The notes beneath the pieces are model-generated. The model was not told the origin of the DNA. It did no database searches and was given only the letters and a program-made list of their open reading frames with translations. Below are positions 9,082 to 39,694 of a DNA stretch of 64,000 bases, piece after piece. Within the stretch, counting starts at the first letter, position 1; every line of letters begins with the position of its first letter. Location: the IMG/VR virus record IMGVR_UViG_3300042516_005475, positions 1 through 64,000 of that record, one strand, 5' to 3'. Made by a program: the position numbers and the translations under genes.

Positions 9082-10729
9082 AGTATTGAGGTAGCTTATC
9101 CTTACACTTCATGAGCACAAACTTAATTGCCCCATCTAAGATATAAGTATCACAATGATCTTCTTCAGTTCTGATACCACGACCACAAGCCTGAACAAGA
9201 CTGCTTAGCATCTTATTCTCGTACCATTCAGGATCAAGCTTAAAGAGAGTTTCTACCCGCTTAGAGCCAAGTGGCAAGTAAGGTAGTTTCAACACAATCT
9301 GAAAGCGAGCTAGCTCATCCTTAAGATCAACCCCATGAGTAAGTGAAGGAGATACTAGAACAGTTGGCTTGTCAGACTCTACATGCTCTTTAACAATATC
9401 TTCGTTAGTTTTACCTGATTGACGGTAAAGCATTCGATCACCATAGTCATCAAATTTAGCTTTAACGTATTCAGTAATTTTAAACGAATGTGTATGAATA
9501 ATACCTTTATCGTTCTTATACTTGTCAACTAGCTCTTTTGCAATATTGCAAACATGAGGTAGGTTCTGTTCAAGGTTAGCATGATTTAGCTTATACTTAG
9601 TATGAACAAAAATTGGAGCCTTCTTAGGATCAAACGATGAAGGCATTTCAACATACTCATACTCTTCAATGCCAAGACTCTTAGCAAAATTAACTGGATC
9701 AATAATAGTTGCTGACATCAGAATAATCTTCTCACCATGATTAAAGATATGACTTGAGAGCTTATCAACCTTCAACGGAGAGAAGTTAACAGCTGTAGCA
9801 GACTTCTCAATCACATACTTACAATCATTCCAATGACCAGTAACAGTCTTAACAGAGTGCACAACATTATTCAAGCCACGAAGCTTATTTTGCTGAGCAT
9901 CAGAAAGCTCTTTCTTATTACGCTTTTCAGTTAGAATCTTGATTTGTTCTTCAATAACACACAATAGATTAGTAAGCCATTCAATGACTCGATTAGGTAC
10001 ATCAGTAGCTAGCTTTTGAGTATGAATTCCAAGCTGAGCCAAACGCTCATAGCTAATATCAAACCCGAAACGCTTTACCAATTCGTCTTCAAGCTCTGCA
10101 GCCTCATCACAAATCAAAAGCTCTTTACGCTTCAGTTGGTCTGGTAGAGCCAAAAACATACTATAATTAAGAATGCCAAAATTACTAGTAACAACTCGAT
10201 TACGAGCCTCATAGTACGGGCAAATACACTTTTTCCAGCAATCATCTTTAATCTTTCCAACAACAACACAAGGAGCAATTTCAACATCCTTAGTTTCATC
10301 AATTGTACATTGATAGTTAGATTTACCTTTTAAAATATCAGAATCATCAAAAAACTCCTTGTATTGGTTCTGCAAATTCTTTGAAATTGTCAATACCATT
10401 GAACCAAAAGGTTGTTGCTTATCAATTTCTTCTTGATTAGAGAATTCACCAGACTGATCCATCTGATAAATAGAATACGAATCAACCAAATGCTTAAAGT
10501 CTTTGCTACAAGAGTCAGTCAAGTTAGCTACAGTGCGAGAAATATAAGACTTACCTGAGCCTGTAGGCGCACATAGAATAAGAAACTTTTTATCTCCACG
10601 AAGAAACTTTTCAATCTTCTTTAAGACAGCAGCCTGCTGTGCTCGAGGGGTGTGGTTACTTGGAAATGCTGATAGGATGTCTTTCTGTTTCACTACGTTG
10701 AGTATAGCGTCACGTGAAATGAAAAGCAA
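9062..10729 (-). CDS. DinG/XPD-family SF2 helicase
   Basis: APTGSGKS Walker A, KGKSNYQC plus Cys cluster, ICDEAA, MSAT, GVDL, QACGRGIR. Confidence 0.85.
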   Translation of the reverse strand: MLFISRDAILNVVKQKDILSAFPSNHTPRAQQAAVLKKIEKFLRGDKKFLILCAPTGSGKSYISRTVANLTDSCSKDFKHLVDSYSIYQMDQSGEFSNQEEIDKQQPFGSMVLTISKNLQNQYKEFFDDSDILKGKSNYQCTIDETKDVEIAPCVVVGKIKDDCWKKCICPYYEARNRVVTSNFGILNYSMFLALPDQLKRKELLICDEAAELEDELVKRFGFDISYERLAQLGIHTQKLATDVPNRVIEWLTNLLCVIEEQIKILTEKRNKKELSDAQQNKLRGLNNVVHSVKTVTGHWNDCKYVIEKSATAVNFSPLKVDKLSSHIFNHGEKIILMSATIIDPVNFAKSLGIEEYEYVEMPSSFDPKKAPIFVHTKYKLNHANLEQNLPHVCNIAKELVDKYKNDKGIIHTHSFKITEYVKAKFDDYGDRMLYRQSGKTNEDIVKEHVESDKPTVLVSPSLTHGVDLKDELARFQIVLKLPYLPLGSKRVETLFKLDPEWYENKMLSSLVQACGRGIRTEEDHCDTYILDGAIKFVLMKCKDKLPQYFIQRFQ

Positions 10730-11045
10730 GCTTATTGTTTAGGTATTTAGACTTATAAAGTTTGTAATACTCATCTATTTTAATTTTCAGAGTAATATCA
10801 TCTGTAAGAAGCTCTACTTTATAGTCGAATAAAAATCCAGCTGCAGTTTCAACTATTTTAAATGGTAGTGGTATTTCCAAATACTTGTTCTTGTTATTTG
10901 AATTGATACAAAAAACTAAATAGTATTCTTTTGGAGCAAATAAGATAAACTTACCTGTTCTCAATACTTTTTCATTCAAAAGAATTTGTATGTTCTTTTG
11001 AAAGTGTTTCTGTAATTTTTGCTCCAGTACAAGACTATCTATCAC
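10710..11045 (-). CDS. Hypothetical protein
   Basis: ORF tightly packed in the operon. Confidence 0.6.
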   Translation of the reverse strand: MIDSLVLEQKLQKHFQKNIQILLNEKVLRTGKFILFAPKEYYLVFCINSNNKNKYLEIPLPFKIVETAAGFLFDYKVELLTDDITLKIKIDEYYKLYKSKYLNNKLAFHFT

Positions 11046-11059
11046 AAATATTAATTACA

Positions 11060-11437
11060 CTAAACGCGCATAAAGTCAATTTTTTGCTTCTCTGTCATAA
11101 AGGCTAGCTTCTCATTATAGTATTGCCAAAATTCATCATTAGCCTTTATTGTAGCTACAACTTGACAGGCTGCTACATTAACTTGTCTATAGTCTTGTTC
11201 AAAAATATCCCAGGTAACAACTAAACCTTTTAATTCTGGATTATAATCTAATTGCTGGTGTGGTGGGCGGTAGTTAAGAGCAACTCTACCCTTTGTGCTG
11301 TTTAAGAGAGAATAGCTGTTGGTACAAAGCATTCTTCTAAAAAGAGGTTCGCCAGGCTGCGGTCTGCGCCTGGCGAATTTAAGTTCTACTACGTTTTGCT
11401 GTAAGAGAAGTTTTAACTGATTTAGGCTTACTTTCAC
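11060..11437 (-). CDS. WYL-like/SH3-fold phage protein (DUF2693-like)
   Basis: VVELKFARR...RRMLCT...VVTWDIFEQDYRQV pattern. Confidence 0.55.
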   Translation of the reverse strand: MKVSLNQLKLLLQQNVVELKFARRRPQPGEPLFRRMLCTNSYSLLNSTKGRVALNYRPPHQQLDYNPELKGLVVTWDIFEQDYRQVNVAACQVVATIKANDEFWQYYNEKLAFMTEKQKIDFMRV

Positions 11438-11448
11438 CTAATTATTTA

Positions 11449-11886
11449 TTAACTCATTGTAACTGCTGGCTGTTCTGCTTTAGAGCAAACACCGAAAATA
11501 CGAGTCTCATCCAAGAAAATAGACTGCTTAATCTTCCCAAGACCTCTTACAACAACGTTTGATACTGGAATGCCTTTATCATTTGGAAAGCAAACGTAAT
11601 CATCAACCTTAACATTCTTGCAATCAGGACCAGCAAGAATAATCTGTCCAATTCTCCAGGCCGCCTTGGTGTGGTCGATTGGTACTAGAATACCGTTTCT
11701 CATAACAGTTTGATTACTGTCAGGTGTATCAACATAGCGAACTAGAATAATATTATCAAGAACCTTATCAAGTTCAAAGTCATCAATAAGAGTGAATGTA
11801 TCACTGGCATGTTTGTCAAAGTTCAATGCGCTTGTTTTTTGCATATGAACTGGGACAGGAACATTAGTAGGAAGTGTTGGTACCAT
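11449..11886 (-). CDS. groES: GroES-like co-chaperonin
   Basis: DNIILV...NGILVP...GQIILAGPDCKNVKVDDYVCF. Confidence 0.8.
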   Translation of the reverse strand: MVPTLPTNVPVPVHMQKTSALNFDKHASDTFTLIDDFELDKVLDNIILVRYVDTPDSNQTVMRNGILVPIDHTKAAWRIGQIILAGPDCKNVKVDDYVCFPNDKGIPVSNVVVRGLGKIKQSIFLDETRIFGVCSKAEQPAVTMS

Positions 11887-11908: not shown

Positions 11909-12268
11909 TTACTTTTCAAGATGCTCTGCGTACATTTTAATCTCTCGCTGAGATAATTCAAGATTGCGAGCAAGCATTTCCAGATTTTCATCCTCCTTAG
12001 TCTTTTCTTTCTTTACTTTTTTAATGTATTCGATTTTCTTATATCGCATGCGAGGAATTACATTAATAAGAAACTTATTTTGTTCATCCTTAGACAAACA
12101 CATCCAATAGCGATTAGATGTTTCGTTAACAATAGTAGCAACTTCACCACTATGCATACTCAACCACCTATTAACAAGGAAAAACTGATACTCCCGCTCT
12201 TCTTCAACAGAAATATCAGTCTTCTTTTTTAACGTGGTGATATTAGTAATAATATCAAAAATCGTCAT
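11909..12268 (-). CDS. gp62: Clamp loader small subunit, gp62-like
   Basis: YQFFLVNRWLSM...QNKFLINVIPR...YIKK...LSQREIKMY. Confidence 0.75.
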   Translation of the reverse strand: MTIFDIITNITTLKKKTDISVEEEREYQFFLVNRWLSMHSGEVATIVNETSNRYWMCLSKDEQNKFLINVIPRMRYKKIEYIKKVKKEKTKEDENLEMLARNLELSQREIKMYAEHLEK

Positions 12269-12849
12269 TAGATAACCTTACTAGTAGCAATAAAGATATC
12301 ATCAGTAATAGCATAAAAAATCTCAACAACCTTCTTCATAAACTCTTCAACTTGCTGATGAGTCATGTTAGTCGAGAATGCAAAAGCAGGAGCCTTCTTA
12401 CCAGCAGTAACGTTAATAGCGGTATGACCTAGAGCAGCACCATTAACCAAATGAGTAATACTCACACTAGCCTTACCCTTGGGTTGAATAATACCATGCT
12501 GGTTATGCTCAGCATGAACAATCAAATCATCCCCATCAACCTCAATAGGTTTATTGATAATGGAAGTAAGAATATTTGCAATCTGAGTATTAAAGAGACG
12601 CTGAAATGAAACAGCCGCGAAAGCATCAATATTAGGAATTTCCCAGCAAAAGTTAACTGCGTCATCACTGTAAATGTAGTCATTATTAAGAATATCTTCT
12701 GTATCAATCATACCCTCAGCTTCAACATGCATCGGTGCACGGAATGCAACAATGTTGCCGATAGGCAAGGTACGATCTCGAAAGAACTTATAGGCAAAGC
12801 GCTTATGAATGAGATTGCCATCGTAGATCGGAATATTATTCAATATCAT
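12268..12849 (-). CDS. DUF366-like protein (BPL/LplA ligase-like fold)
   Basis: YDG..., IVAFRAPMHV, D.ED, SDDAVNF, QRL, DGDDL, KASVSI, HTAINV match the archaeal DUF366 motif order as recalled. Confidence 0.7.
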   Translation of the reverse strand: MILNNIPIYDGNLIHKRFAYKFFRDRTLPIGNIVAFRAPMHVEAEGMIDTEDILNNDYIYSDDAVNFCWEIPNIDAFAAVSFQRLFNTQIANILTSIINKPIEVDGDDLIVHAEHNQHGIIQPKGKASVSITHLVNGAALGHTAINVTAGKKAPAFAFSTNMTHQQVEEFMKKVVEIFYAITDDIFIATSKVI

Positions 12850-14225
12850 GCGTTGATTCTAATATATTTTTCAGCGAGTTCAACTGAAACCTTTTCAAGT
12901 TTTAATTCTTCTAGCAGCTCTAATATTCCTACATTCCCACGCTTTGGATTTCTGCAGTCATAGAAATACAAATAATCGTCAATATAAACTTCATTCTCTG
13001 CAAATGAAGGTATAGCCAATGAATAGAATCTATCTTCTTGATCGTTCATCTCTGGAAAGAGAATATTCAGAGCAATAGATTTCTTAACAGGGGACAAATG
13101 GTTGGGGCAACGATAGTAGGTTACAGGTTGAGCTGATCCATCAATTGTACCCATTTTATGGCTCCAGTTCTTATGCTTCATTGTAATCTCAACACGTCTA
13201 GGAGTCTTACCATTGAAAGTAATAATACTGTTAAAACCAACAACATCAGGCTTGCTGTCAGTTGCTTTGAGAATTTTTTCGACATATTTTTCTGAAACCC
13301 AATCATCATCATCAATAAAAGCTATATACTCTCCTGATGCATTGTGAATTAAGTCGTTACGCTTCTTACCAATAGTTAGCTCTCTATTATCTTTTGCTAC
13401 AAGAATTTCTACTTCTGGGGTTAGTTGAGGTTTTAGTCTTGTTTTAAGGCGCTCAAGATAATTCTCTCTACCATTCACTGTGCAAATTAGCAAACTAAGT
13501 CTCTTGTAAGGCTTTGGAACAAATCTAGTATTCCATTTTTCTTTGAAGATAGCATGCTGAAAATCCATACTACATAAATTACGATCTTCTGCTTTAATAG
13601 TTCCATGAGACTTACTAAGCAAATGATGTATATGAGAGCTTGTACACAAGCCATGCTTCACATTGTAAGAGTTATACATCTCGACCCAGTCATTGTCTTG
13701 ATAATAAAAGGCAAAGCGTTCATCAAAACCACCTAAAATATTAAATAACTTTCTACGAATAATAAAACTCCAACCAGTAAACTCGTAAGAGGTTCTTGTT
13801 CCAATGTGAAGTTCTTTTAATGAGCTAAAGATAGACTCGGTATGTCTGTGCCACTTACGATCAATTGGGCTAACAGACATTAACTCAGGATCAATTTCAA
13901 ATTGTTTTGCAATAGCAGTAAACCAACCCTTGTAATAAATAACATCATTATTTGTAATTAGCACCAAATCGTTTTTACATTCTCTCAAACCAATGTTTAA
14001 GTATAGATTGTAATTAAATTTAGGTACTTGTGGGATAAGAAACTTTGCTCTTATTTCAGAAAGCTTGTGAGTAAACAAAGAAGAAACTTCTTTGCAAGAT
14101 TCAACAACAATTACGTTAAATTTATGCTCTGGTTCTGAATCATGAATAGAATCAACAGTTTGTTTAAGAATATCAAACAACTCGTTAGTAGTTGTGTTGC
14201 TAAGAATAATTACATCGACGTCCAT
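12846..14225 (-). CDS. Two-domain GT2 glycosyltransferase
   Basis: Domain 1: NNDV, GGFDERF...QDND. Domain 2: TIGKKRN, GEYIAFIDDDD, QED. Confidence 0.85.
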   Translation of the reverse strand: MDVDVIILSNTTTNELFDILKQTVDSIHDSEPEHKFNVIVVESCKEVSSLFTHKLSEIRAKFLIPQVPKFNYNLYLNIGLRECKNDLVLITNNDVIYYKGWFTAIAKQFEIDPELMSVSPIDRKWHRHTESIFSSLKELHIGTRTSYEFTGWSFIIRRKLFNILGGFDERFAFYYQDNDWVEMYNSYNVKHGLCTSSHIHHLLSKSHGTIKAEDRNLCSMDFQHAIFKEKWNTRFVPKPYKRLSLLICTVNGRENYLERLKTRLKPQLTPEVEILVAKDNRELTIGKKRNDLIHNASGEYIAFIDDDDWVSEKYVEKILKATDSKPDVVGFNSIITFNGKTPRRVEITMKHKNWSHKMGTIDGSAQPVTYYRCPNHLSPVKKSIALNILFPEMNDQEDRFYSLAIPSFAENEVYIDDYLYFYDCRNPKRGNVGILELLEELKLEKVSVELAEKYIRINA

Positions 14226-15028
14226 AGAGTTTTAGTCTTAATAGCCTTTAATCTTTGCAGAACAATGTCCTGCTTAGTATCAGAAATAGATACAGGAGAG
14301 TCTTTATATATCAAGCTGAAATAATTGGCTCCATCTTGAATATTCTTTTTCCAATCTGATCTTGGTCGAATAGTAGAATCGTTTTCTGAGCAAGCCAATT
14401 CTTCGAGAAAATCACTTGAATTAACAATATCAGGCCACCACCAATAGGCTGGTAGATACCCGTTTAGAACAGCTCTATAACTGTGTTCTACATGTTCCCA
14501 AGCATTAACAAAAGTCTCATCAAACAAACCAATTCTCATTAGGAGATCCCTGCTATAGTAACAGAAGCCACCTACGCAATTAGGGTTGAATGCTAGTTTA
14601 GTTTTACTATATTCAACTACACAGCGAGGGTCTGGCTTTTTATCTTTCTTATTAGCTGGACCGTGATATCCAAACATTAGGTGTTTAATGCCAGAATCTT
14701 TACTCGCCTTAATATATTCATCAAAGACGTTAGAGTCTTTAATAAAAATATCATCTTCAAGCAAAAAGATATCAGTGCAATCTTGGTTAAGCAAATGAAG
14801 CATAGCTTTATTTTTGCTACGACCTACACCAATATTCTTTTCATTCTTTAAGTATGTTAAATTCAGAGTATCTACTATTGATGGTAAAGGCTCATTACCA
14901 TCGTCTACAAGAACAACCTCATCAAGCCTATTAAAAGGTATTGTTTTAAGAACCTGTTTAAGGAATACAGGTCGATTGCAGGTAATAATACCCAGTCCGA
15001 TTTTTTGTTTTGTTTTAGTTTCTATCAT
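14210..15028 (-). CDS. GT2 glycosyltransferase
   Basis: IITCNRP, VLVDDG, NIGVGRSKN, FLLEDD, IGLFDE; start trimmed to MIETKTK. Confidence 0.85.
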   Translation of the reverse strand: MIETKTKQKIGLGIITCNRPVFLKQVLKTIPFNRLDEVVLVDDGNEPLPSIVDTLNLTYLKNEKNIGVGRSKNKAMLHLLNQDCTDIFLLEDDIFIKDSNVFDEYIKASKDSGIKHLMFGYHGPANKKDKKPDPRCVVEYSKTKLAFNPNCVGGFCYYSRDLLMRIGLFDETFVNAWEHVEHSYRAVLNGYLPAYWWWPDIVNSSDFLEELACSENDSTIRPRSDWKKNIQDGANYFSLIYKDSPVSISDTKQDIVLQRLKAIKTKTLWTSM

Positions 15029-15719
15029 CTTGACAAGTCCATATTTGGAGGTTAAACCGATTATTTTCCCAAGGCATAGCTGGATCACAGATTACTTCTG
15101 AGCAAGCATGCGGTAATCTAGATGGAAAAATACATAAGAAATTATTTTTAAGAGGGTATTCATAACATTTACCCTCATGCATAAACAGCTGGCTACCACC
15201 CTTAAGTAGAGATTCATCTTTGACAAGAGTATACGACATGGTAAAGACAGGTGTCATAGCTACTTCTTTACCTTTAATTGAAAGACCGTAAATTCCATCA
15301 TCAGAATGCCAATTATAATAATCACCATTACCGTAGCTAATAATATGAGTTCTTCCATTAAGACCATATCGAGAACCCAATTGAAACTCTCTACTCTTGC
15401 ATTGACCCATAAACTTGAGTATGCCTTGATGAAAGAAAAACTTATCAAGGTTGTTTAATGCATAGCCAGCTGGAATGTTATGATCAGGAAGCCAAACATC
15501 ACTACCCCAACAAAGATGGTTTAAATTATTCTTAGTTGTTTCAAAATCAGTAGAAGTATCTTGCTGTCTTGTTGCACCATCTCCAAATTTCCAAACAGGG
15601 GTACCAAAATACTGTTTGATATCAGTCATTTCTTTATAGATAGTATCAACAACAGCTCTTGGAAGAAAGTTTTCAGCCCATATAATAGGTGGGTCAGTTT
15701 CCTCATGTAGTAAGAACAT
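15015..15719 (-). CDS. 2OG-Fe(II) oxygenase (prolyl-hydroxylase-like)
   Basis: YNWHSD (HxD), GGSQL, IFPSRLPHAC, NRF; start trimmed to MFLLHEE. Confidence 0.8.
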   Translation of the reverse strand: MFLLHEETDPPIIWAENFLPRAVVDTIYKEMTDIKQYFGTPVWKFGDGATRQQDTSTDFETTKNNLNHLCWGSDVWLPDHNIPAGYALNNLDKFFFHQGILKFMGQCKSREFQLGSRYGLNGRTHIISYGNGDYYNWHSDDGIYGLSIKGKEVAMTPVFTMSYTLVKDESLLKGGSQLFMHEGKCYEYPLKNNFLCIFPSRLPHACSEVICDPAMPWENNRFNLQIWTCQDDRN

Positions 15720-15780
15720 ACATTTTATTTTAAAGTAAAAATTTGGATTTTCAACTAAATATACATATATATCTTTGATT

Positions 15781-16467
15781 ATGTCATCCAAAACTCCAAA
15801 GACATTTAATGTAGCAGAGAAGTTTGAGCTTTCTGAAAATCACAAACGGATTGTAGATGCTATATTAGATAGAGACAATAAGCTTATCTTTATTGATGGA
15901 CCAGCAGGTTCAGCCAAGACATACTGTGCTGTATTAGCAGCCTTAAAACTTGTTCAAAGAAAGAGCTTCAAGAGCATTCTTTATTTGAGAAGCATTGCTG
16001 AATGTTCTAGTCAAAAACTAGGTTCATTACCTGGAGAGTTGCATGAGAAGATTGGTCCGTTTGGAGCCCCATTTTTGGAAAAGCTTAGCGAAATGATTTC
16101 AGAGGCTGCAATTACTAAGTTAGCATCTGAAAGCGCTTTAGATATTCAGCCTCTTAACTTCTTGAGAGGTACTACATTCCATGATAAGATTGTATTGCTA
16201 GATGAGGCTCAAAATGCTGAACTCGATCAGCTCATCATTGTTCTAACCCGTCTTGGAGAACACGGAAAGCTTGTTGTTATCGGAGATAGTAACCAAGTAG
16301 ATATTAGAGATAAGAAGAGCTACGGAAATGTTGTAGCTAAGTTTAATAGTGAGGAATGTAAGAGTGTTGGCATTCAATCCTTCACTCTCACAGAAGATGA
16401 TATTAAAAGAAGTAAGATCTTAAAGTTTATTGTTGGTAAGCTTAATGAACTTAAGTCTAACCGTTGA
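15781..16467 (+). CDS. phoH: PhoH-family ATPase
   Basis: GPAGSAKT, LGSLPGEL, FLRGTTF, LDEAQN, TRLGE, GDSNQVD. Confidence 0.9.
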   Translation: MSSKTPKTFNVAEKFELSENHKRIVDAILDRDNKLIFIDGPAGSAKTYCAVLAALKLVQRKSFKSILYLRSIAECSSQKLGSLPGELHEKIGPFGAPFLEKLSEMISEAAITKLASESALDIQPLNFLRGTTFHDKIVLLDEAQNAELDQLIIVLTRLGEHGKLVVIGDSNQVDIRDKKSYGNVVAKFNSEECKSVGIQSFTLTEDDIKRSKILKFIVGKLNELKSNR

Positions 16468-16675
16468 TGTGAAACTTAAGAGCTTTGGAAATCTTTTCCA
16501 TAATCTTTTTAGGATGATTTCCTTCTTTTAAAAGTCTATTGTACTCGCTTTTGAAGCTTGTAATAAACTCTTCAGACAACTTTAGATTTCTTGGATAAAA
16601 TAATCGAGACTGTGTTCTTAACGGGGCATAGTTCTCGAGTAATTTATTGAAGTTGTTATTGAATTCTTTCATCAT
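16457..16675 (-). CDS. Hypothetical late protein (N-terminus MMKEFNNNFNKLLE)
   Basis: TAAATA box just upstream; shares the N-terminal signal family. Confidence 0.6.
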   Translation of the reverse strand: MMKEFNNNFNKLLENYAPLRTQSRLFYPRNLKLSEEFITSFKSEYNRLLKEGNHPKKIMEKISKALKFHING

Positions 16676-16680
16676 AGTAT

Positions 16681-16896
16681 TTATTTTTTGCAATGAAAAT
16701 TTAAAAACCAATTAGACTGTGCTTTTGTATGAGCAGTAGCCTTTTTGGTTTTTAGCTTTCTAGCCTTGCTACAAGTCATCTTGCCTTTACCGAATTTCTT
16801 GGTAGCTTTAGCTTTAAGAGTACCTTTACCACCTCGCGGAGTGGTGCGGGTGGTTTTTTCTAAAAGAGTAAAAAATCTCTTTTCGTACTTGTTCAC
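16681..16896 (-). CDS. Small basic late protein
   Basis: Lys/Arg-rich; GTG start 6 nt after TAAATA. Confidence 0.65.
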   Translation of the reverse strand: MNKYEKRFFTLLEKTTRTTPRGGKGTLKAKATKKFGKGKMTCSKARKLKTKKATAHTKAQSNWFLNFHCKK

Positions 16897-16937
16897 TACA
16901 ATTATTTATTCTTTTTAGTTTGTTCGCGCCAAAGATA

Positions 16938-17516
16938 TTAGTTTATTTTTTTTAAAAACGTATATAAACTCTCCCAATTATAAACTCTATCCCCTGTCCA
17001 GTTTTTATTGTATGGGTGATCCATAATTATACTTCGCAACCCAACTTGTTTACCGCTTTCTGCATGAGAAACACTATCCTCTAACCAAAAATAATTTTTA
17101 TCCTTGTACTGAACTTTAAGAAAATCTAATTTACTTTTTTTAAAATCTAAACTACAATTAATATAGTCAAACACATCTCCAAATAGGTGTTTTAAATTGT
17201 TTACTCTTAACCTTTGAGCGTATTTGTCAATATGTAAACAACTGATAACTTCAAACCTCCAACCATCTTCTGCTAATTTTTTTACAAATTCTTGAGCATC
17301 TCGGAAAGGCGGAAGAAAACCAACTGCTCCACTTTCATTAAACCTTGATATACAATCTAAGGCTACCTCTTCAGGTAGCCCATATCTAGCACCTTGATAA
17401 AAAATGTGGTCGGTGTTAGGTAATCTTTCATAGCCTCGCTCACTCATCCATACATCGAAAGCAAAAGACCAGTCAAGTAAAACACCGTCACAATCAGTGA
17501 TTAATTTCTTATGCAT
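16938..17516 (-). CDS. HAD-family 5'(3')-deoxyribonucleotidase-like phosphatase
   Basis: TDCDGVL (DxDG), WLEDS, HPYN. Confidence 0.8.
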   Translation of the reverse strand: MHKKLITDCDGVLLDWSFAFDVWMSERGYERLPNTDHIFYQGARYGLPEEVALDCISRFNESGAVGFLPPFRDAQEFVKKLAEDGWRFEVISCLHIDKYAQRLRVNNLKHLFGDVFDYINCSLDFKKSKLDFLKVQYKDKNYFWLEDSVSHAESGKQVGLRSIIMDHPYNKNWTGDRVYNWESLYTFLKKIN

Positions 17517-18242: not shown

Positions 18243-18959
18243 TTATTTATTTTTTTCAGGTTTCTTTTGCTCAGGTCTTGCCAAGGCTTCTAAGGCCTCA
18301 ATATCTTCCATGCCGAGATTTGGATCGTTAAAGATATTAGCATTAGGGTCCATTGAGTCTCCATCCGCATCAAGATAGAGCTTCATGATCTGAATACGTT
18401 CATTACGCTCACCGTATGTTTCAATAATAGGTGGTCGATCATCAGCATGAAAATAATTAGATTTTGGATTATCTCTATTTTCCATTGCAAACACCTTAAA
18501 GAGATTATCAATCTCAACTCGCATAAAAGGGTTAGCATCTCTCATACCATCTTCTTGAATATCAGGAGTCTTGGCTGCTCTTGTAATTGGGATATAGAAA
18601 ATAATATCAATATGTTTTAGAGCATCACGAACAACTGGGATACACTTCTTAATAAAGTCAAAATCAATATCTCCAACGTTGTGATGATAGGCCCACATAG
18701 AATACACGAGATTATCTAGCGGACAACGATCAAATACAATTCTATCACTTTTGCGAGTACCTTCTAGTTGCTTGACCATAAAGTCAAGAATAGCCTGTTG
18801 GGATTCTTTAGTAGTTTTTGAGCTATGGGTTAAACCTTTTTCAACTAAAACATCTCTATATGTCTTTTCTGGAGATTTATAGTTAGTCCACTCAGCAAGA
18901 AAATCTTTAATCAGAGTAGATTTGCCCATGCACTGGGCACCGGAAATGGCAATTCTCAT
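18243..18959 (-). CDS. P-loop nucleotide kinase (AAA_28/dNMP-kinase-like)
   Basis: ISGAQCMGKST, FDRCPLDNLVY, EDGMR. Confidence 0.75.
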   Translation of the reverse strand: MRIAISGAQCMGKSTLIKDFLAEWTNYKSPEKTYRDVLVEKGLTHSSKTTKESQQAILDFMVKQLEGTRKSDRIVFDRCPLDNLVYSMWAYHHNVGDIDFDFIKKCIPVVRDALKHIDIIFYIPITRAAKTPDIQEDGMRDANPFMRVEIDNLFKVFAMENRDNPKSNYFHADDRPPIIETYGERNERIQIMKLYLDADGDSMDPNANIFNDPNLGMEDIEALEALARPEQKKPEKNK

Positions 18960-19660: not shown

Positions 19661-20392
19661 TTAAACCTTGAGAGCTTTATTCCACAAGACCAATTGCAAT
19701 CGAGGACTAAAGTTAAAACCATGCTTCTTGCAAACCTCTGCTACCCAAGGAGCAACAGCATTATGCTCATCTCGAGAACCACAGCAAGGCATCAACCAAA
19801 TTTGATCTTCAGTAATACTAAAAGGTTTGATATACTTTTCGATAATCTCTTCAACATCACTATCTTTCTGCACAACAAACTTAAAGTAAGAGTAGATACT
19901 AGCGTGGTAAGCAATAACCTCTGGAACGTATCTCTTCTCTTCTGGATCTCCGTTAGTAGACAACTTAGGAGACACAGTAAAAGTAGCATTTATACTTTCC
20001 CAAAAACTTGAAGGATTAATCGTACAGTTAGTTTCAAAATCAATAACAGGATAGAAATCGAACTTTCTGAAAAAGGCTTCAATAAACTCAATCAAAGCCT
20101 TTTGCTGAATAAGAGGTTCACCACCAGTAATCTTAAGAACATGATTGCCTTTCAACTTATTTAGGTAATCATTATCTTCAAAGATCTTAAAGATCTCTTC
20201 AAAGGTTAGCTTATTCTTCTTAGACCAGCTAACATAGCTATCACAACCAAACGGAGAATCAGGAGACTTAAACCCGATGCAAGTCAAGTTGCACATTGCC
20301 AATCGCATGAAGATGCTTGGCTTACCAACCAAATGACCTTCACCTTCGATAGTTTCAAAGACAAAGTCATCAGAGAGAAATAATGAACTCAT
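19661..20392 (-). CDS. queE: 7-carboxy-7-deazaguanine synthase (radical SAM)
   Basis: FETIEGEG, FMRLAMCNLTC...CDS, ITGGEP, ETN, TVSPK, SPRLQ. Confidence 0.9.
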   Translation of the reverse strand: MSSLFLSDDFVFETIEGEGHLVGKPSIFMRLAMCNLTCIGFKSPDSPFGCDSYVSWSKKNKLTFEEIFKIFEDNDYLNKLKGNHVLKITGGEPLIQQKALIEFIEAFFRKFDFYPVIDFETNCTINPSSFWESINATFTVSPKLSTNGDPEEKRYVPEVIAYHASIYSYFKFVVQKDSDVEEIIEKYIKPFSITEDQIWLMPCCGSRDEHNAVAPWVAEVCKKHGFNFSPRLQLVLWNKALKV

Positions 20393-20422: not shown

Positions 20423-21118
20423 TCAAGCCCATTTAGTACCAAAGTCCCAGGTACTAGGACGATTCTTACCACCGACTGGAACCCCTTGCGGAGGAGCATC
20501 AGTCTGCTTAGGGGTAACCCTAACTGGTTTATTTGTGTCATAAGCCAAGGCTTCAGTCTGCTTTTCAGACTTAGCAGGCGGAGCCCAGACAGGTTCAGCA
20601 GTCTTACCCTTCTTGCCTTTGCCTTTAGCAGGCGCAGCCTCAGCTTCATCAGCAACTTCTGCTGTAGATTCTTGAGCAGTTTCAGCAGAATAAATAGCAG
20701 AGTTCTTCTCATGCTCAAACACCTCAACAGAATGAGCTCGAACTCGACCGCTAGTCTTATGCTTCACGTAGCTATCTGCAGCATTAAAGCAATACTTTGC
20801 AAACAACTCAATTCCAACCCCTTCATCCATAACAACGATTGAGGCAGCTCCAGCCTTTTCAAGAGCCTCAAACTCTTTCATAGCAGGGTCATTCTTAGCA
20901 AGAACGAGAGTATGATCAAACTTCTCCTGCAAGAATCCCTTCAATTCGTCAAAGTCTCCGAAGTCAACAACCCAATTGTTGCCGTCAAGAGAATCAGAAG
21001 TAAACGTAAATTTACCAACCAATCGATAACCATGAATGAATCTGCAATGGGACTTTGCATTAGGCTGACGAAATGCAGCACTTCCGAGTTCAATAACCTT
21101 CGTGGAATAATATCTCAT
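20423..21118 (-). CDS. queD: 6-carboxy-tetrahydropterin synthase with a low-complexity C-terminal extension
   Basis: SHCRFIHGY, WVVDFG, FDHT, EHEKNSA; start trimmed to MRYYSTK. Confidence 0.85.
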   Translation of the reverse strand: MRYYSTKVIELGSAAFRQPNAKSHCRFIHGYRLVGKFTFTSDSLDGNNWVVDFGDFDELKGFLQEKFDHTLVLAKNDPAMKEFEALEKAGAASIVVMDEGVGIELFAKYCFNAADSYVKHKTSGRVRAHSVEVFEHEKNSAIYSAETAQESTAEVADEAEAAPAKGKGKKGKTAEPVWAPPAKSEKQTEALAYDTNKPVRVTPKQTDAPPQGVPVGGKNRPSTWDFGTKWA

Positions 21119-21157
21119 ACTCAGATATGTTATGAACATTTTTCCTAGAATCAAGCC

Positions 21158-21191: not shown

Positions 21192-21848
21192 ATGAATGAT
21201 GAGATTAGAGAGAAAGATTACCTCCTCCCGACTGCTAACAGTTCTATGGCTTTGACAGAAGAGCAAAAGCTTGCTATTATCGACAAGGGTGCTAAGGCAT
21301 ATGAGACTTTTTTGGATGCTCTTCGCATTGACTGGCGTAATGATCCGAATAGCGCAGGTACTCCTCGACGTGTTGCAAAGTCGTACGTGTTTGATTTAAT
21401 CTCTGGGTGCTATGAGGCTCCGCCGAAGATTACTTCTTTTCCTGCTGATGGTTATGATGGCATCGTCTCTCAGACGAATATTCCGTTGACTAGTATGTGT
21501 AGCCATCACCATTTGGCCTTTACTGGATTGGTGCATGTTGCTTATATTCCTAGTCTTGAAGGTCGTGTTATTGGCTTGAGTAAGCTCAATCGTATTGTTG
21601 AGTTTTATGGTCGTCGACCTCAGATTCAAGAAGGTTTGACGATGCAGATTCATAAGGCTATTAACGAGGTCTGCGAGCATAACAAGGGTGTTGCAGTTGT
21701 TGTTAAGGCTCAGCATACTTGTGCTTGTAATCGAGGTGTGAGACATCAAGGTTGTTATATGGTTACATCTAAGCTGTCTGGAGACTTCTATGATGACGAG
21801 AAGACTCGCAAGGAGTTTTACGACTTTATTAAAATGGCTGAAGAGTAG
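21192..21848 (+). CDS. folE: GTP cyclohydrolase I
   Basis: TPRRVAK, SMCSHH, GLSKLNRIV, RPQIQE, HTCACNRGV. Confidence 0.95.
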   Translation: MNDEIREKDYLLPTANSSMALTEEQKLAIIDKGAKAYETFLDALRIDWRNDPNSAGTPRRVAKSYVFDLISGCYEAPPKITSFPADGYDGIVSQTNIPLTSMCSHHHLAFTGLVHVAYIPSLEGRVIGLSKLNRIVEFYGRRPQIQEGLTMQIHKAINEVCEHNKGVAVVVKAQHTCACNRGVRHQGCYMVTSKLSGDFYDDEKTRKEFYDFIKMAEE

Positions 21849-37594: not shown

Positions 37595-37600
37595 GTGTGT

Positions 37601-38311
37601 ATGAGTAAGTGTGTAATTCCTGTTAGTGGTGGCATTGATTCAACGGTCATGCTTTATGATGCTGCTGCATCTAAGACCTATTCAGATATCTTCGCGATTA
37701 GTTTTTATTACGGTCAGCGTCATGCTACGAATGAGCTGGCTTGTGCAACTAAATCTGTTAATACTTTAAAGGAAAAGTACCCAGAGATTAATATCTATCA
37801 CCGAAACATTGATCTAAGCTTCTTTGGTGAGATTGCTATTAGCTCTTCAATTACCAATAATGATATTGCTGTTGCTCAGACTAAAGATGTTCTTGGTGAT
37901 CCACAGCCGGTTAATTATGTACCGTTTCGTAATCTAATGATGCTTTCTATTCTCTGCTCTTTTGCAGAGGCTCATGGTGCTCGAGATGTTTACTATGGTA
38001 GTGCTCTTGTTGATTCTCAGGCTGGGTATTGGGACTCTAGTAATGAATTCTACTTGAATCTCGCTTCTGTTATTGGTCTCAATCGTAAGAATAAGATTTC
38101 TATTATTACACCGTTGATTAAGCTTGATAAGAAAGATATTATCAAGTTAGGTGATGAGCGTGGGGTTGACTTTAAGAGTACCTGGACTTGTTATGAAGGT
38201 AAAGAACAAGCCTGTGGATATTGTCCAGCCTGCTCTAGTCGAATCAAAGGCTTTATGGATTATATGATGGTTGACCCTATTGAATACAGCCGAAAGATTA
38301 AATTTATCTAA
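37601..38311 (+). CDS. queC: 7-cyano-7-deazaguanine synthase
   Basis: SGGIDS, YGQRH, YVPFRN, TWTCY...CGYCPAC. Confidence 0.95.
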   Translation: MSKCVIPVSGGIDSTVMLYDAAASKTYSDIFAISFYYGQRHATNELACATKSVNTLKEKYPEINIYHRNIDLSFFGEIAISSSITNNDIAVAQTKDVLGDPQPVNYVPFRNLMMLSILCSFAEAHGARDVYYGSALVDSQAGYWDSSNEFYLNLASVIGLNRKNKISIITPLIKLDKKDIIKLGDERGVDFKSTWTCYEGKEQACGYCPACSSRIKGFMDYMMVDPIEYSRKIKFI

Positions 38312-38312
38312 T

Positions 38313-38963
38313 ATGTGTGCAATATTTGGTTCTGCTTCTAAAGAAAAATTTGTTAAACTATACGAGTTAAATAAACCTAGAGGTGTATCTGCTTCCAGTT
38401 ATTTAACTATAACTGATAATGGTTGGATTGATTGTTACAAGAGCGCTGGTGCATTTGATGAAAATAGATTAAAATCTAGTAAGTTATATCTTGGTCATTG
38501 CCAGGCTCCAACCACAGTTAATCAGAGCTTTAACCCTGAACTAGCTCACCCATTTTATTGGAATCGCTTTTATGTCGCTCACAATGGTATTATTACCAAT
38601 GTAGAAGAGCTTTGTGAAAAGTACTTTATTAAGCTTGAAGATATTAAAGTTGACTCTAGTATCATACCTGCTTTGATAGGTTACTTCTATCATAAAAAGA
38701 ACTCTGACCAACTTCAAGACATTATTAAGCGTGTTGCTGAGTTGCTCAAAGGTACTTTTGCTTGTTATATTGTAGATGAAAGATCTAATCGAATATTTCT
38801 TATTCGATCAGGTTCTACCTTGTTCTATGATCAAGATAGCAATATCTCCTCTACTAAGTTTGATAATGCTATTCCTTTTGAAGAAGGTAGGGTAGGTGAA
38901 ATTGTTAAAAACAAGATTATATATCACAATACCTTTATTTGTAACTCCCCATTTTTTATATGA
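38313..38963 (+). CDS. Class II (Ntn) glutamine amidotransferase
   Basis: M-C-AIFG start (Cys1 nucleophile), GHCQAPT, AHPF, HNGII, VDS. Confidence 0.8.
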   Translation: MCAIFGSASKEKFVKLYELNKPRGVSASSYLTITDNGWIDCYKSAGAFDENRLKSSKLYLGHCQAPTTVNQSFNPELAHPFYWNRFYVAHNGIITNVEELCEKYFIKLEDIKVDSSIIPALIGYFYHKKNSDQLQDIIKRVAELLKGTFACYIVDERSNRIFLIRSGSTLFYDQDSNISSTKFDNAIPFEEGRVGEIVKNKIIYHNTFICNSPFFI

Positions 38964-39694
38964 AAATTTTATTTTATACTTGTACTAAACAGAACGTAGA
39001 TGCATTTCTTAAGTTCTCTCCATTAATTAAATGTCTTGGTCTTGGCAACGATTTGCCTTACAAGCCTAAGAAAGCCTCTCTTAATGAACCTCTCGAACTC
39101 AATTACAAGTTTAAGAATCTTCGTTATGGTGCTGATCTGATTGTTTGGACTGAAAATACTGATAGTCTCAGTGTTCAGTATAACAAGGCTAAGAAGTATT
39201 ATGATCAATACGATGCTATTATATTCTTGCACGATGATGTGTTTATTACTGATGCCTTCTTAATTGAGAAGCTCCAGGTAGCCTTTGCACAATTTGACGT
39301 TGTTGGATTGGCAGGTGGAGCTGATATTAGTCTTAAGAGCTATGGCTTGTGGCATATGATGTGTGATCCAAAGACCTTTAGTGGTGCAGTTTCACATTTT
39401 GATAATTCTGGAAAAGAGTTTGTTACAGCCTTTGGACCGTTTGGCAAGCGTTGTTTGCTTTTAGATGGTTTGTTCTTGGCTGTAAACACTAAGACAGCTA
39501 AGGCTGTTAATTGGGACGAAAATGTAAAGTTCCACCATTACGACTTGCTATTCTGCTTGGAAGCTAATAAACTCAAGCTGAAGCTAGGTACTGCTCCTAT
39601 TTACGTGACTCATGAATCTCCTGGATTAAAAGGATTTAGTGAGGAATTTAAGAAGAGTGATGCTTACTTCAAAGAATACTTTAACAAATACTAA
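38960..39694 (+). CDS. GT-A-fold glycosyltransferase-like protein
   Basis: SLSVQYN, FLHDDV, VVGLAG, LDGLFLA, WDE..FHHYD, HESPG. Confidence 0.75.
   Translation: MKILFYTCTKQNVDAFLKFSPLIKCLGLGNDLPYKPKKASLNEPLELNYKFKNLRYGADLIVWTENTDSLSVQYNKAKKYYDQYDAIIFLHDDVFITDAFLIEKLQVAFAQFDVVGLAGGADISLKSYGLWHMMCDPKTFSGAVSHFDNSGKEFVTAFGPFGKRCLLLDGLFLAVNTKTAKAVNWDENVKFHHYDLLFCLEANKLKLKLGTAPIYVTHESPGLKGFSEEFKKSDAYFKEYFNKY

What the first reader, a model, noticed from the sequence alone, without database searches (positions are those of the whole stretch)
12268..12849. DUF366-like ligase-fold protein in a phage with a preQ0 pathway
The motif order matches DUF366, a mostly archaeal family of unknown function with a BPL/LplA-like fold. 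My recollection, which needs checking, is that it often neighbours queC/queD/queE in prokaryotes. Its presence in a phage with folE, queD, queE, queC and an amidotransferase makes it a candidate for an unassigned step in 7-deazaguanine chemistry. Here it is coupled to the GT2 genes and gp62.
Basis: partly seen in the sequence, partly recalled or inferred. Interest (0 to 1): 0.6.

Follow-up and report, generated by a model that had tools for sequence, protein, structure and literature searches.

The report
Extra enzyme in deazaguanine gene sets
A small, very conserved phage gene of unknown function (DUF366, biotin/lipoate-ligase fold) nearly always sits inside the operon that makes the modified base precursor preQ0 in bacteria and next to the same genes in unrelated phages, so it is probably an unrecognised fifth component of 7-deazaguanine synthesis.

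Summary
Window 12268-12849 (minus strand) encodes a 193-aa full-length DUF366/PF04017 protein (E 2e-23). Its model matches PH0223 (2ddz, Z 23) and then the catalytic domain of biotin and lipoate protein ligases (Z 11-14).

In 139 of 140 bacterial loci examined (Bacillota, Actinomycetota) DUF366 lies in the order queD-queC-DUF366-queE(-folE). In four other phage lineages it sits beside queC, folE/folE2, queF, DpdA1, DpdA3 or a DpdN-like formyltransferase.

The host genome is an uncultured 230-kb T4-like phage. It carries folE, queD, queE, queC and Gat, and outside the window a DpdA3-like transglycosylase, a formyltransferase and queF. DUF366 is a core gene of this lineage: 545 viral contigs carry it, at 70-75% identity where the portal is about 55%.

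The coupling to GT2 genes and gp62 is lineage synteny. No isolated phage record carries a credible copy, and no searchable paper mentions the family.

Pathway membership is well supported. The chemistry is inferred: ATP-dependent activation of a pathway carboxylate, most likely CDG.

The parts
12268..12849 (-). DUF366 (PF04017) protein, 193 aa, with a BPL/LplA/LipB-like fold. This is the finding.
   Evidence: Pfam E 2.1e-23. 2ddz matches at Z 23.2 and BPL at Z about 13. 70-75% identical across a lineage whose portals are about 55% identical.
11909..12268 (-). gp62-like small clamp-loader subunit. Its ATG overlaps the DUF366 stop (TAATG).
   Evidence: phrog_225, E 4.4e-12. Sequence. Adjacent to DUF366 in most of the 80 related loci.
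12846..14225 (-). GT2 glycosyltransferase (two GT2 regions). Its stop overlaps the DUF366 start (ATGA). It is part of a variable sugar island.
   Evidence: PF00535, E 2e-19. Present next to DUF366 in only 13 of 80 related loci.
18243..18959 (-). AAA_28 / deoxynucleoside-kinase-like P-loop protein next to queE. A second AAA_28 gene lies next to the DpdA3-like gene outside the window.
   Evidence: PF13521, E 1e-12. Found in 21 related loci. AAA_28 or AAA_18 genes flank DpdA3 in L094, L249, phi19:2 and the phage's own genome.
19661..20392 (-). QueE-like radical SAM enzyme (7-carboxy-7-deazaguanine synthase).
   Evidence: Fer4_12, E 0.0018. It aligns with bacterial QueE and keeps the CxxxCxxC cluster motif and other invariant residues (A4).
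20423..21154 (-). QueD (6-carboxytetrahydropterin synthase). The PTPS domain lies at about 20684-21082; the true start is probably internal to the listed ORF.
   Evidence: PF01242, E 8e-16.
21192..21848 (+). FolE, GTP cyclohydrolase I.
   Evidence: PF01227, E 7e-48.
37595..38311 (+). QueC (7-cyano-7-deazaguanine synthase) with an intact PP-loop and four zinc cysteines.
   Evidence: PF06508, E 1.4e-53. Invariant residues S11, G13, D15, S16, C199, C207, C210, C213 in alignment A5.
38271..38963 (+). Class II glutamine amidotransferase (Gat), overlapping the end of queC.
   Evidence: GATase_6/7. Homologue of the gene that follows queC in Vibrio phage nt-1 (E 1e-11).
38960..39694 (+). Glyco_tranf_2_5 protein coupled to queC-Gat. 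Its homologues lie directly upstream of DUF366 in other T4-like relatives.
   Evidence: PF13712, E 5.6e-11. L249 has DpdA3-GT2_5-DUF366 and L248 has GT2_5-x-DUF366, both at E about 1e-30.

Best explanation
The gene encodes a genuine DUF366 protein that is an accessory, fifth component of the GTP-to-preQ0 (7-deazaguanine) pathway. In this uncultured T4-like phage it serves a DpdA3-type DNA-modification system. The gene set is folE, queD, queE, queC and Gat in the window, plus a DpdA3-like transglycosylase, a DpdN-like formyltransferase and queF at genome positions 226-229 kb. The most likely mechanism follows from the fold. Like biotin and lipoate ligases, the protein would bind ATP and activate a carboxylic acid as an acyl-adenylate. 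The substrate would be a pathway carboxylate, most likely 7-carboxy-7-deazaguanine (CDG), the branch-point intermediate made by QueE and used by QueC or DpdL. The activated acid would then pass to ammonia or another amine, which assists or parallels the first half-reaction of QueC. What is shown: family membership, fold, and gene context across bacteria and several phage lineages. What is inferred: ATP use, CDG as substrate, and the product.
For: Family and fold. Bacterial context: DUF366 is present in 42 of 401 and 37 of 401 sampled genomes of two phyla. All 60 loci fetched have que genes adjacent, 43 of them as queD-queC-DUF366-queE with or without folE. Among named Desulfotomaculia, Desulfosporosinus and similar loci, 79 of 80 have que neighbours and 68 have the full queD-queC-DUF366-queE-folE order. 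Annotated examples are Desulfuribacillus alkaliarsenatis and an Actinomycetota MAG. Independent phage contexts are as follows. L088: DpdA1-queD-queE-queC-DUF366-folE-queF. L087: queC-DUF366 overlapping. L094: DUF366-folE2-PRTase-AAA_28-DpdA3-AAA_28. L250: folE2-queE-queF-formyltransferase-DUF366. L249 (T4-like): DpdL-like-AAA_18-DpdA3-GT2_5-DUF366-gp62. L248: GT2_5-x-DUF366-gp62-x-folE. The tree places these phage copies in different clades, so DUF366 has stayed with que genes after several transfers. In the phage's own lineage, QueC is found in 12 of 15 long records. In the phage's own genome, a DpdA3-like ORF is the reciprocal best hit of phi19:2 gp042, followed by Formyl_trans_N, AAA_28 and QueF. 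Active-site retention: a profile-profile alignment puts DUF366 GDD(106-108) on the BPL WPND motif, K126 on the BPL catalytic lysine, and H142..N146 on the BPL GIGxN motif. These are among the best-conserved DUF366 columns. Selection: DUF366 is 70-75% identical where the portal is 51-57% and gp62 is 30-50%.
Against: No biochemical data exist. FolE, QueD, QueE and QueC alone are reported to make preQ0 in vitro (established knowledge, not tested here), so no step is formally missing. About 90% of sampled genomes, and all 200 QueC-bearing isolated phage records, lack DUF366. The hhalign match to BPL is weak (probability 43%, E 2.4e-4), and the BPL glycine-rich ATP/biotin loop has no identified counterpart. 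PF03099 itself does not hit the protein. Two DUF366 genes have no que gene nearby: L093 within 8 kb, and the bacterial-looking 'MaAM05' record, which has no QueC in 274 kb. In this phage DUF366 is 7 kb from queE and 25 kb from queC. The archaeal context was not examined.
Confidence: 0.45

Rival explanations
1. DUF366 is a non-catalytic or regulatory partner in the same pathway. It would be a ligand-binding subunit derived from a ligase fold that holds or hands over an intermediate (CDG, ADG or ammonia released by QueE), or that scaffolds QueC and QueE.
For: The position between queC and queE is highly conserved. The known four enzymes suffice in vitro (established knowledge). The protein is only the 190-aa core domain with no acceptor-binding C-terminal domain. 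PH0223 self-associates in a two-hybrid screen (PMC1414084), and 2ddz holds six chains.
Against: The columns that align with the BPL catalytic lysine, the WPND aspartate and the GIGxN asparagine are invariant or nearly so in bacterial and phage members. That is more typical of an enzyme. The complex prediction with QueC and QueE gave no verdict, so nothing supports binding.
Confidence: 0.2
2. DUF366 is a tailoring enzyme that acts after preQ0. It would ligate a carboxylate or amine onto a 7-deazaguanine base (free, in tRNA or in DNA) and so give a further derivative. In these phages the product could be a new hypermodified DNA base, possibly elaborated by the associated glycosyltransferases.
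For: Ligase fold. In phages DUF366 sits next to tailoring genes: queF, a DpdN-like formyltransferase, a DpdL-like gene and GT2_5. It lies at the edge of a variable sugar and glycosyltransferase island. The known phage derivatives are diverse (PMC10516641).
Against: In bacteria it lies within the core queD-queC-queE-folE operon and not with tgt, queA, queG or queF. It accompanies different end-product gene sets: QueF, DpdL-like, Gat, and the archaeal control genomes. This points to a shared early step rather than one particular decoration.
Confidence: 0.15
3. DUF366 belongs to the replication module. Being translationally coupled to gp62, it would be a clamp-loader or polymerase accessory factor, by analogy with the aaRS-like accessory subunit of mitochondrial polymerase gamma.
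For: The stop and start codons overlap with gp62. The block DUF366-gp62-three small ORFs-helicase-gp15-portal is conserved in most of 80 related loci.
Against: Bacterial and non-T4 phage homologues have no such neighbours and sit in que operons. The adjacency is confined to one viral lineage. In sub-lineages the upstream neighbours are DpdA3 and GT2_5.
Confidence: 0.03
4. DUF366 is part of the glycosyltransferase and sugar-nucleotide island. For example, it could activate an acid for glycan or virion-protein decoration.
For: The ATGA overlap with the GT2 gene. Sugar-pathway genes lie upstream in relatives: epimerase, DegT, PfkB, NTP-transferase and a B12 radical SAM enzyme.
Against: The island is hypervariable while DUF366 is constant. 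The GT2 neighbour is shared by only 13 of 80 loci. There is no sugar context in bacteria.
Confidence: 0.03

Closest known systems
PH0223 of Pyrococcus horikoshii (PDB 2ddz), the only solved DUF366 protein, function unknown
   Same: Same Pfam family. Sequence match E 6e-6. The structure superposes on the model at Z 23.2, rmsd 2.1 over 177 residues, TM 0.76. Same length and single-domain build.
   Different: About 25% identity. It is archaeal, and its genomic context was not examined here. No ligand or activity has been reported in the searchable literature.
Biotin protein ligase (BirA/BPL), lipoate-protein ligase LplA and octanoyltransferase LipB (PF03099 superfamily)
   Same: The whole 190-aa protein maps onto their catalytic domain (Z 11-13.6, about 155 aligned residues). 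The profile alignment matches the WPND, catalytic-lysine and GIGxN motifs to the DUF366 GDD, K126 and HxGxN motifs.
   Different: No PF03099 hit. 7-16% identity. No C-terminal or acceptor-protein domain. No recognisable GRGRxGR or RRxxGGG loop. The gene context is deazapurine synthesis, not biotin or lipoate metabolism.
QueC, 7-cyano-7-deazaguanine synthase
   Same: QueC is the known ATP-dependent enzyme that activates the CDG carboxylate. It is the most frequent upstream neighbour of DUF366. The proposed DUF366 chemistry parallels its first half-reaction.
   Different: Unrelated fold (PP-loop ATPase with a zinc site). QueC is not replaced by DUF366: where it is missing from the operon it is found elsewhere in 10 of 14 genomes, and the phage keeps an intact QueC.
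[quoted passage not shown]
   Same: This phage has a DpdA3-like gene, folE, queD, queE, queC, queF and a Formyl_trans_N gene. That is the gene set reported for immuto_2-6A, which carries fdPreQ1. A P-loop ATPase gene lies next to DpdA3, as in phi19:2.
   Different: None of the isolated phages has DUF366. This phage adds DUF366, a Gat and a Glyco_tranf_2_5 protein. Its DNA has not been analysed, so the base it makes is unknown.
Aspartate-ammonia ligase AsnA (class II aaRS-like fold; from general knowledge, not tested here)
   Same: It is a precedent for a small-molecule carboxylate plus ATP plus ammonia giving an amide plus AMP on a related alpha/beta ligase fold. The proposed analogous reaction is CDG to ADG.
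   Different: No sequence or direct structural comparison was made here. This is an analogy of chemistry only.

Membership tests
DUF366 (Pfam PF04017 / COG2029) | Scores above the Pfam gathering threshold over the full profile | tested here: met
   83.2 bits against 29.9, profile positions 11-183 of 184. 82.1 bits in the six-frame genome search.
DUF366 (Pfam PF04017 / COG2029) | Single-domain protein of about 175-205 aa with the fold of PH0223 (2ddz) | tested here: met
   193 aa. The AF2 model has pLDDT 97. 2ddz matches at Z 23.2, rmsd 2.1, 177 aligned residues.
DUF366 (Pfam PF04017 / COG2029) | Conserved motif set: YDG, D49/D52, E70, QR, GDD, K-x-SVS, HxGxN and C-terminal KV | tested here: met
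   All are present in P0001. They are invariant or nearly invariant in the bacterial and cellular-type alignments (A2, A6) and conserved in A1.
BPL/LplA/LipB cofactor ligases (PF03099) | Match to the PF03099 profile | tested here: not met
   No PF03099 hit at E <= 1. The relationship is visible only by structure and by a weak profile-profile alignment.
BPL/LplA/LipB cofactor ligases (PF03099) | Catalytic-domain fold | tested here: met
   Foldseek probability 1.00, E about 1e-6, TM 0.45-0.59. VIA Z 11-13.6 over about 155 residues.
BPL/LplA/LipB cofactor ligases (PF03099) | Adenylate-site residues: catalytic lysine, WPND aspartate, GIGxN asparagine | tested here: inconclusive
   hhalign aligns K126, D107/D108 and N146 to them, but only at 43% probability and E 2.4e-4. 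No residue-level structural superposition was available.
BPL/LplA/LipB cofactor ligases (PF03099) | Glycine-rich ligand/ATP loop and a C-terminal or accessory domain for the acceptor protein | tested here: not met
   The protein ends with the core domain (model range 1-190 against BPL residues about 80-257). No glycine-rich loop motif appears in alignments A1, A2 or A6.
Phage 7-deazaguanine DNA-modification system (Dpd) | [quoted passage not shown] | tested here: met
   Catalytic motifs are intact in QueC and QueE.
Phage 7-deazaguanine DNA-modification system (Dpd) | A DpdA-family DNA transglycosylase | tested here: met
   No TGT (PF01702), DpdA1, DpdA2 or DpdA4 was found. Genome ORF 226049-226882 is the reciprocal best hit of phi19:2 gp042 (DpdA3) at E 3e-7 and 2e-7. 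It matches the L094 homologue at E 6e-15 and is linked through the L249 DpdA3 (E 2e-57 to phi19:2, 4e-11 to this ORF). This is a remote match, not a Pfam-level one.
Phage 7-deazaguanine DNA-modification system (Dpd) | 7-deazaguanine derivative actually present in virion DNA | not testable with these tools
   This needs LC-MS/MS or restriction analysis of phage DNA. The phage is known only from metagenomes.
preQ0 biosynthesis operon component (functional class) | Conserved operon membership with queC, queD and queE across distant taxa | tested here: met
   139 of 140 bacterial loci. Six phage contexts.
preQ0 biosynthesis operon component (functional class) | Same linkage in Archaea, where the Pfam family was first defined | not tested
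   The family is found in the Methanocaldococcus jannaschii and Methanosarcina acetivorans control genomes. No archaeal locus could be fetched: the alignment-based scans failed, and the one successful scan returned only Bacillota among its best 80.

The most novel reading that the evidence does not exclude
DUF366 catalyses a so far unrecognised reaction at the CDG node of deazapurine synthesis. One candidate is an AMP-forming CDG-ammonia or CDG-amine ligase, that is, an ADG or CDG-amide synthase. The reaction would be used by anaerobic Bacillota and Actinomycetota, by Archaea, and by a globally distributed uncultured T4-like phage lineage. Together with the recurrently linked Glyco_tranf_2_5 protein and the DpdA3-like transglycosylase, the phages might then carry a 7-deazaguanine DNA base not among the eight known derivatives.
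Probability: 0.25. Interest if true: 0.8.

Novelty: new variant of a known kind. Interest (0 to 1): 0.66.

Why it matters
The GTP-to-preQ0 pathway is regarded as fully assigned to four enzymes. It feeds queuosine and archaeosine in tRNA, deazapurine antibiotics, and the 7-deazaguanine DNA modifications that protect phages from restriction.

A fifth gene sits between queC and queE in roughly a tenth of the sampled genomes of two bacterial phyla. It travels with que and dpd genes into several phage lineages. In one abundant uncultured T4-like lineage it is more conserved than the portal protein. These facts imply a function that the current scheme does not describe.

No isolated phage carries a credible copy, which probably explains why phage deazaguanine surveys have not mentioned it. 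The protein is small and soluble-looking, and a homologue has a crystal structure. The candidate substrates (ATP, CDG, CPH4, ADG, preQ0) are defined. The question can therefore be tested directly at the bench.

Tried and rejected
- PHROGs and NCBIfam gave no family for the protein.
- Megablast of the 8-kb region against phage records found nothing.
- The search for related loci with alignments A1, A2 and A3 failed because no stretch was conserved enough. With single divergent proteins P0210, P0253 and P0203 it found no viral relatives. Diverse contexts therefore came from the look-up of encoding contigs.
- Complex prediction of QueC + QueE + DUF366 gave no verdict (ipSAE 0.02 and 0.00, controls not run). 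It counts neither for nor against binding.
No read or expression evidence was obtained, and read laying was not used.
- 'DUF366 replaces QueC' is rejected. In operons of the form queD-DUF366-queE, a full-length QueC is found elsewhere in 10 of 14 genomes; the other four are MAGs with fragments only. The phage has an intact QueC.
- 'DUF366 replaces FolE or QueF' is rejected, because it co-occurs with both.
- 'The phage lacks a DpdA' is rejected. TGT, DpdA1, DpdA2 and DpdA4 searches were negative, but a DpdA3-like ORF was found outside the window.
- The 301-aa ORF at 41043-41948 is not a DpdA. It is weakly DHH-phosphoesterase-like.
- The CP220 queC region gave no DpdA3 lead.
- The single hit among isolated phages, 'Microcystis phage MaAM05', lies in DNA that looks bacterial. 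It is not counted as a phage instance.
- Literature searches for DUF366, PF04017, COG2029, IPR007162, PH0223/2ddz, and queC+queD+queE+'biotin protein ligase' found no functional statement.
Full report
**1. What is at the coordinates**

Window 12268-12849 holds, on the minus strand, an ATG-started ORF of 193 aa (P0001). It matches Pfam DUF366 (PF04017) end to end, with E 2.1e-23 and 83 bits against a gathering score of 29.9. PHROGs and NCBIfam have no family for it.

The only solved relative is PH0223 of Pyrococcus horikoshii (2ddz, E 6e-6). An AlphaFold model built on 70 diverse homologues is very confident (pLDDT 97, pTM 0.91). It superposes on 2ddz at Z 23.2 (rmsd 2.1, 177 residues). Over its whole length it also superposes on the catalytic domains of BirA/BPL (Z 12-13.6), LipB (Z 12.2) and LplA (Z 11-12).

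**2. The genome**

The window is the first 64 kb of a 230-kb IMG/VR virus record. It is a T4-like myovirus with the following genes:
- gp20 portal, gp15, prohead protease and scaffold;
- PolB, UvsX/RecA, DnaB-like helicase and gp32.

Its portal is only about 33% identical to that of any isolated phage, so the lineage is uncultured.

The window carries queE-like, queD and folE at 19.6-21.8 kb. It carries queC, a class II amidotransferase and a Glyco_tranf_2_5 gene at 37.6-39.7 kb. QueC keeps its PP-loop and zinc cysteines, and QueE keeps its CxxxCxxC motif.

Searches for TGT (PF01702), DpdA1, DpdA2 and DpdA4 (DUF6610) were negative. An ORF at genome position 226049-226882, outside the window, is the reciprocal best match of gp042 of Cellulophaga phage phi19:2. 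That phage belongs to species Cbastvirus ST, and gp042 is the DpdA3 of PMC10516641 by position. Three genes follow this ORF: a Formyl_trans_N gene, an AAA_28 gene and a bimodular queF.

The full set is DpdA3-like, folE, queD, queE, queC, queF and a formyltransferase. [quoted passage not shown] The phage is thus very probably a 7-deazaguanine DNA modifier. Which base it makes cannot be read from sequence.

**3. Local anatomy**

The DUF366 ATG overlaps the TGA of a two-domain GT2 gene. Its TAA overlaps the ATG of the next gene, which is the small clamp-loader subunit gp62 (phrog_225).

Across 80 related viral loci the block downstream of DUF366 is conserved: gp62, three small unknown ORFs, an XPD/DinG-type helicase (phrog_2488), gp15 and the portal. 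The upstream side is a hypervariable sugar and glycosyltransferase island. The GT2 neighbour is shared by only 13 loci.

DUF366 is 70-75% identical in phages whose portals are 51-57% identical, helicases 41-50% and gp62 30-50%. It is one of the most constrained genes of the lineage. It is also common:
- 545 viral contigs encode a relative.
- 2183 protein clusters match.
- The matching ESM Atlas cluster has 2368 members, 75% viral.

**4. Does it go with que genes?**

In the T4-like lineage, QueC is found in 12 of 15 long DUF366-bearing records. The three without it are 21-60% complete fragments. That alone could be shared ancestry, so independent contexts were sought.

(a) Bacteria.
- Desulfuribacillus alkaliarsenatis and an Actinomycetota MAG both have queD-queC-DUF366-queE.
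- PF04017 was found in 42 of 401 and 37 of 401 sampled genomes of their two phyla.
- All 60 loci fetched have que genes directly adjacent. Of these, 43 are queD-queC-DUF366-queE with or without folE, and about 10 are queD-DUF366-queE.
- A motif scan of the species-representative genomes gave 397 loci. The best 80 are Desulforamulus, Desulfotomaculum, Pelotomaculum, Desulfofundulus, Desulfosporosinus, Desulforudis and relatives. Of these, 79 show que neighbours and 68 show the full queD-queC-DUF366-queE-folE order.

(b) Other phages.
- L088 (PolA-type): DpdA1-x-queD-queE-queC-DUF366-folE-queF.
- L087: queC-DUF366 overlapping.
- L094: DUF366-folE2-phosphoribosyltransferase-AAA_28-DpdA3-AAA_28-RNR.
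- L250: queD/PRTase fusion, then folE2-queE-queF-formyltransferase-DUF366.

(c) Divergent T4-like relatives.
- L249: DpdL-like-AAA_18-DpdA3-GT2_5-DUF366-gp62.
- L248: GT2_5-x-DUF366-gp62-x-folE.

A quick maximum-likelihood tree puts the bacterial operon copies and the copies of L087, L088, L093 and L094 in one well-supported clade. The T4-like viral radiation falls outside it. The linkage has therefore survived several transfers.

There are two counter-examples. L093 has no que gene within 8 kb. The one hit among 50,697 deposited phage records, 'Microcystis phage MaAM05', lies in DNA that looks bacterial (secDF, glyS, mtgA, fliM, fabI) and has no QueC in 274 kb.

By contrast, 200 deposited phage records carry QueC. 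The isolated deazaguanine phages on which the literature rests lack DUF366. This fits with no searchable paper naming the family.

**5. What it probably does**

The contexts cover different end products:
- queF (preQ1 route);
- formyltransferase (fdPreQ1-like);
- a DpdL-like gene (the decarboxylase proposed to make 7-deazaguanine);
- Gat;
- bacterial tRNA queuosine, since both bacterial genomes checked (Desulfuribacillus alkaliarsenatis and the Actinomycetota MAG) have tgt;
- archaeal genomes.

What they share is the early pathway up to CDG and preQ0. The fold belongs to enzymes that activate a carboxylic acid with ATP as an acyl-adenylate.

A profile-profile alignment with BPL/LplA sequences taken from the same bacterial genomes aligns three DUF366 motifs to BPL motifs (probability 43%, E 2.4e-4):
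- GDD to the BPL WPND motif;
- K126 to the catalytic lysine;
- H142..N146 to GIGxN.

These columns are invariant in the bacterial alignments.

The pathway has two carboxylic acids, CPH4 and CDG. CDG is the branch point, and QueC, the enzyme that activates it, is the commonest upstream neighbour. My best explanation is therefore an ATP-dependent, adenylate-forming enzyme acting on CDG. It would assist or parallel the CDG-to-ADG half-reaction or hand CDG to another amine.

My estimates are as follows:

| Claim | Probability |
|---|---|
| Pathway membership | about 0.85-0.9 |
| An adenylating reaction on a pathway carboxylate | about 0.35-0.45 |
| CDG specifically as the substrate | lower |

It does not simply replace QueC, FolE or QueF, because it co-occurs with all three.

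The rivals are a non-catalytic handover or scaffold subunit, a post-preQ0 tailoring ligase, a replication-module protein, and a member of the sugar island. The last two are contradicted by the bacterial and non-T4 contexts. A three-chain complex prediction with the phage's own QueC and QueE gave no verdict and is not used as evidence.

**6. Comparison with what is known, and novelty**

The protein is a clear member of DUF366. It is a structural relative of PF03099 ligases but not a member of that family:
- there is no profile hit;
- there is no acceptor domain;
- there is no glycine-rich loop.

The surrounding system is a DpdA3-type 7-deazaguanine system (PMC10516641) with extra parts. Three things are new relative to the searchable literature:
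- a conserved fifth gene in the preQ0 operon;
- its repeated capture by phages;
- its status as a core gene of a large uncultured T4-like lineage.

I rate this a new variant of a known kind and moderately to highly interesting, because it makes a concrete gap in a supposedly closed pathway directly testable.

**7. Limits**

There is no biochemical, expression or DNA-composition evidence. The reads tools could not be used. Archaeal neighbourhoods were not examined. The DpdA3 and BPL-motif assignments rest on remote similarity. The tree is the quick version, because the careful search did not finish.

Noticed in passing
Genome G000 positions 226049-229405 (L251:7050-10406), outside the window; also L251:2405-3365: A second deazaguanine cluster lies here: a DpdA3-like ORF (277 aa), Formyl_trans_N (309 aa, DpdN-like), AAA_28 (228 aa) and a bimodular QueF (296 aa). 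A phosphoribosyltransferase and a dCMP deaminase lie about 4 kb upstream. If the genome is circularly permuted, this cluster lies just before window position 1.
   Followed up: partly
window 38960-39694 (+); L249:9306-10001; L248:8924-9628: A Glyco_tranf_2_5 (PF13712) gene is coupled to queC-Gat in the window. Its homologues (E about 1e-30) sit between DpdA3 and DUF366 in L249 and just upstream of DUF366 in L248. It is a recurrent, unexplained companion of the deazaguanine genes and could mean a glycosylated derivative.
   Followed up: partly
window 18243-18959 (-); L251:8826-9512; L094; L249; phi19:2 gp041 (L247:8057-8554): P-loop kinase-like genes (AAA_28 or AAA_18) recur next to queE or DpdA3 in this phage, in L094 (two copies flanking DpdA3, one with an intein), in L249 and in Cellulophaga phage phi19:2. 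Their role is unknown. Together with the phosphoribosyltransferases in L094, L250 and the phage's own genome, they hint at nucleotide-level handling of the base.
   Followed up: no
window 22426-23532 (+): A tubulin/FtsZ-family gene with a TubZ-like C-terminal domain (PF00091, E 2e-17) lies next to folE in a T4-like phage. It is conserved in the closest relatives (L011, L028).
   Followed up: no
window 2928-3386 (-): A TnsA-like endonuclease N-terminal domain ORF (PF08722, E 3e-20) lies between the prohead protease and the gp13-like and portal genes. It is in the same place in distant relatives (L086 and the P0191 contig), so it is a fixed lineage gene rather than a stray mobile element.
   Followed up: no
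window 12846-18234 (-) and the equivalent regions of L086, L089 and other related loci: The stretch between queE/AAA_28 and DUF366 is a hypervariable sugar island. Here it holds two GT2 genes, a 2OG-Fe(II) oxygenase, a HAD phosphatase and an NTP-transferase. Relatives have an epimerase, a B12 radical SAM enzyme, PNP_UDP_1, DegT aminotransferase, PfkB, RXYLT1_C, E1_dh/transketolase and an IMPDH-family gene. Its target (virion glycan, host surface or DNA base) is unknown.
   Followed up: partly
window 10710-11886 (-): Three small ORFs (111, 125 and 145 aa) lie between gp62 and the helicase. They have no Pfam or PHROG match but are conserved in 50-77 of 80 related loci, always in this order.
   Followed up: no
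L085 (GenBank MW495066.1, 'Microcystis phage MaAM05', 104417-128878): The region around the only DUF366 hit in deposited phage records is annotated with secDF, glyS, mtgA, engB, fabI, fliM, pomA and ompA. It looks like bacterial chromosome, so the 274-kb record may be misassigned or chimeric.
   Followed up: partly
L250:4308-5387; L094:7181-9115: L250 has a QueD (PTPS)-phosphoribosyltransferase fusion protein (359 aa). L094 has an intein with a LAGLIDADG domain inside an AAA_28 gene. In L250 no queC was found within 10 kb of a queF-containing cluster that has DUF366.
   Followed up: no
window 41043-41948 (+): A 301-aa ORF coupled to the DnaB-like helicase has no Pfam match. It weakly resembles a DHH phosphoesterase of Bacillus phage Nachito (25% identity, E 5e-4).
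   Followed up: partly
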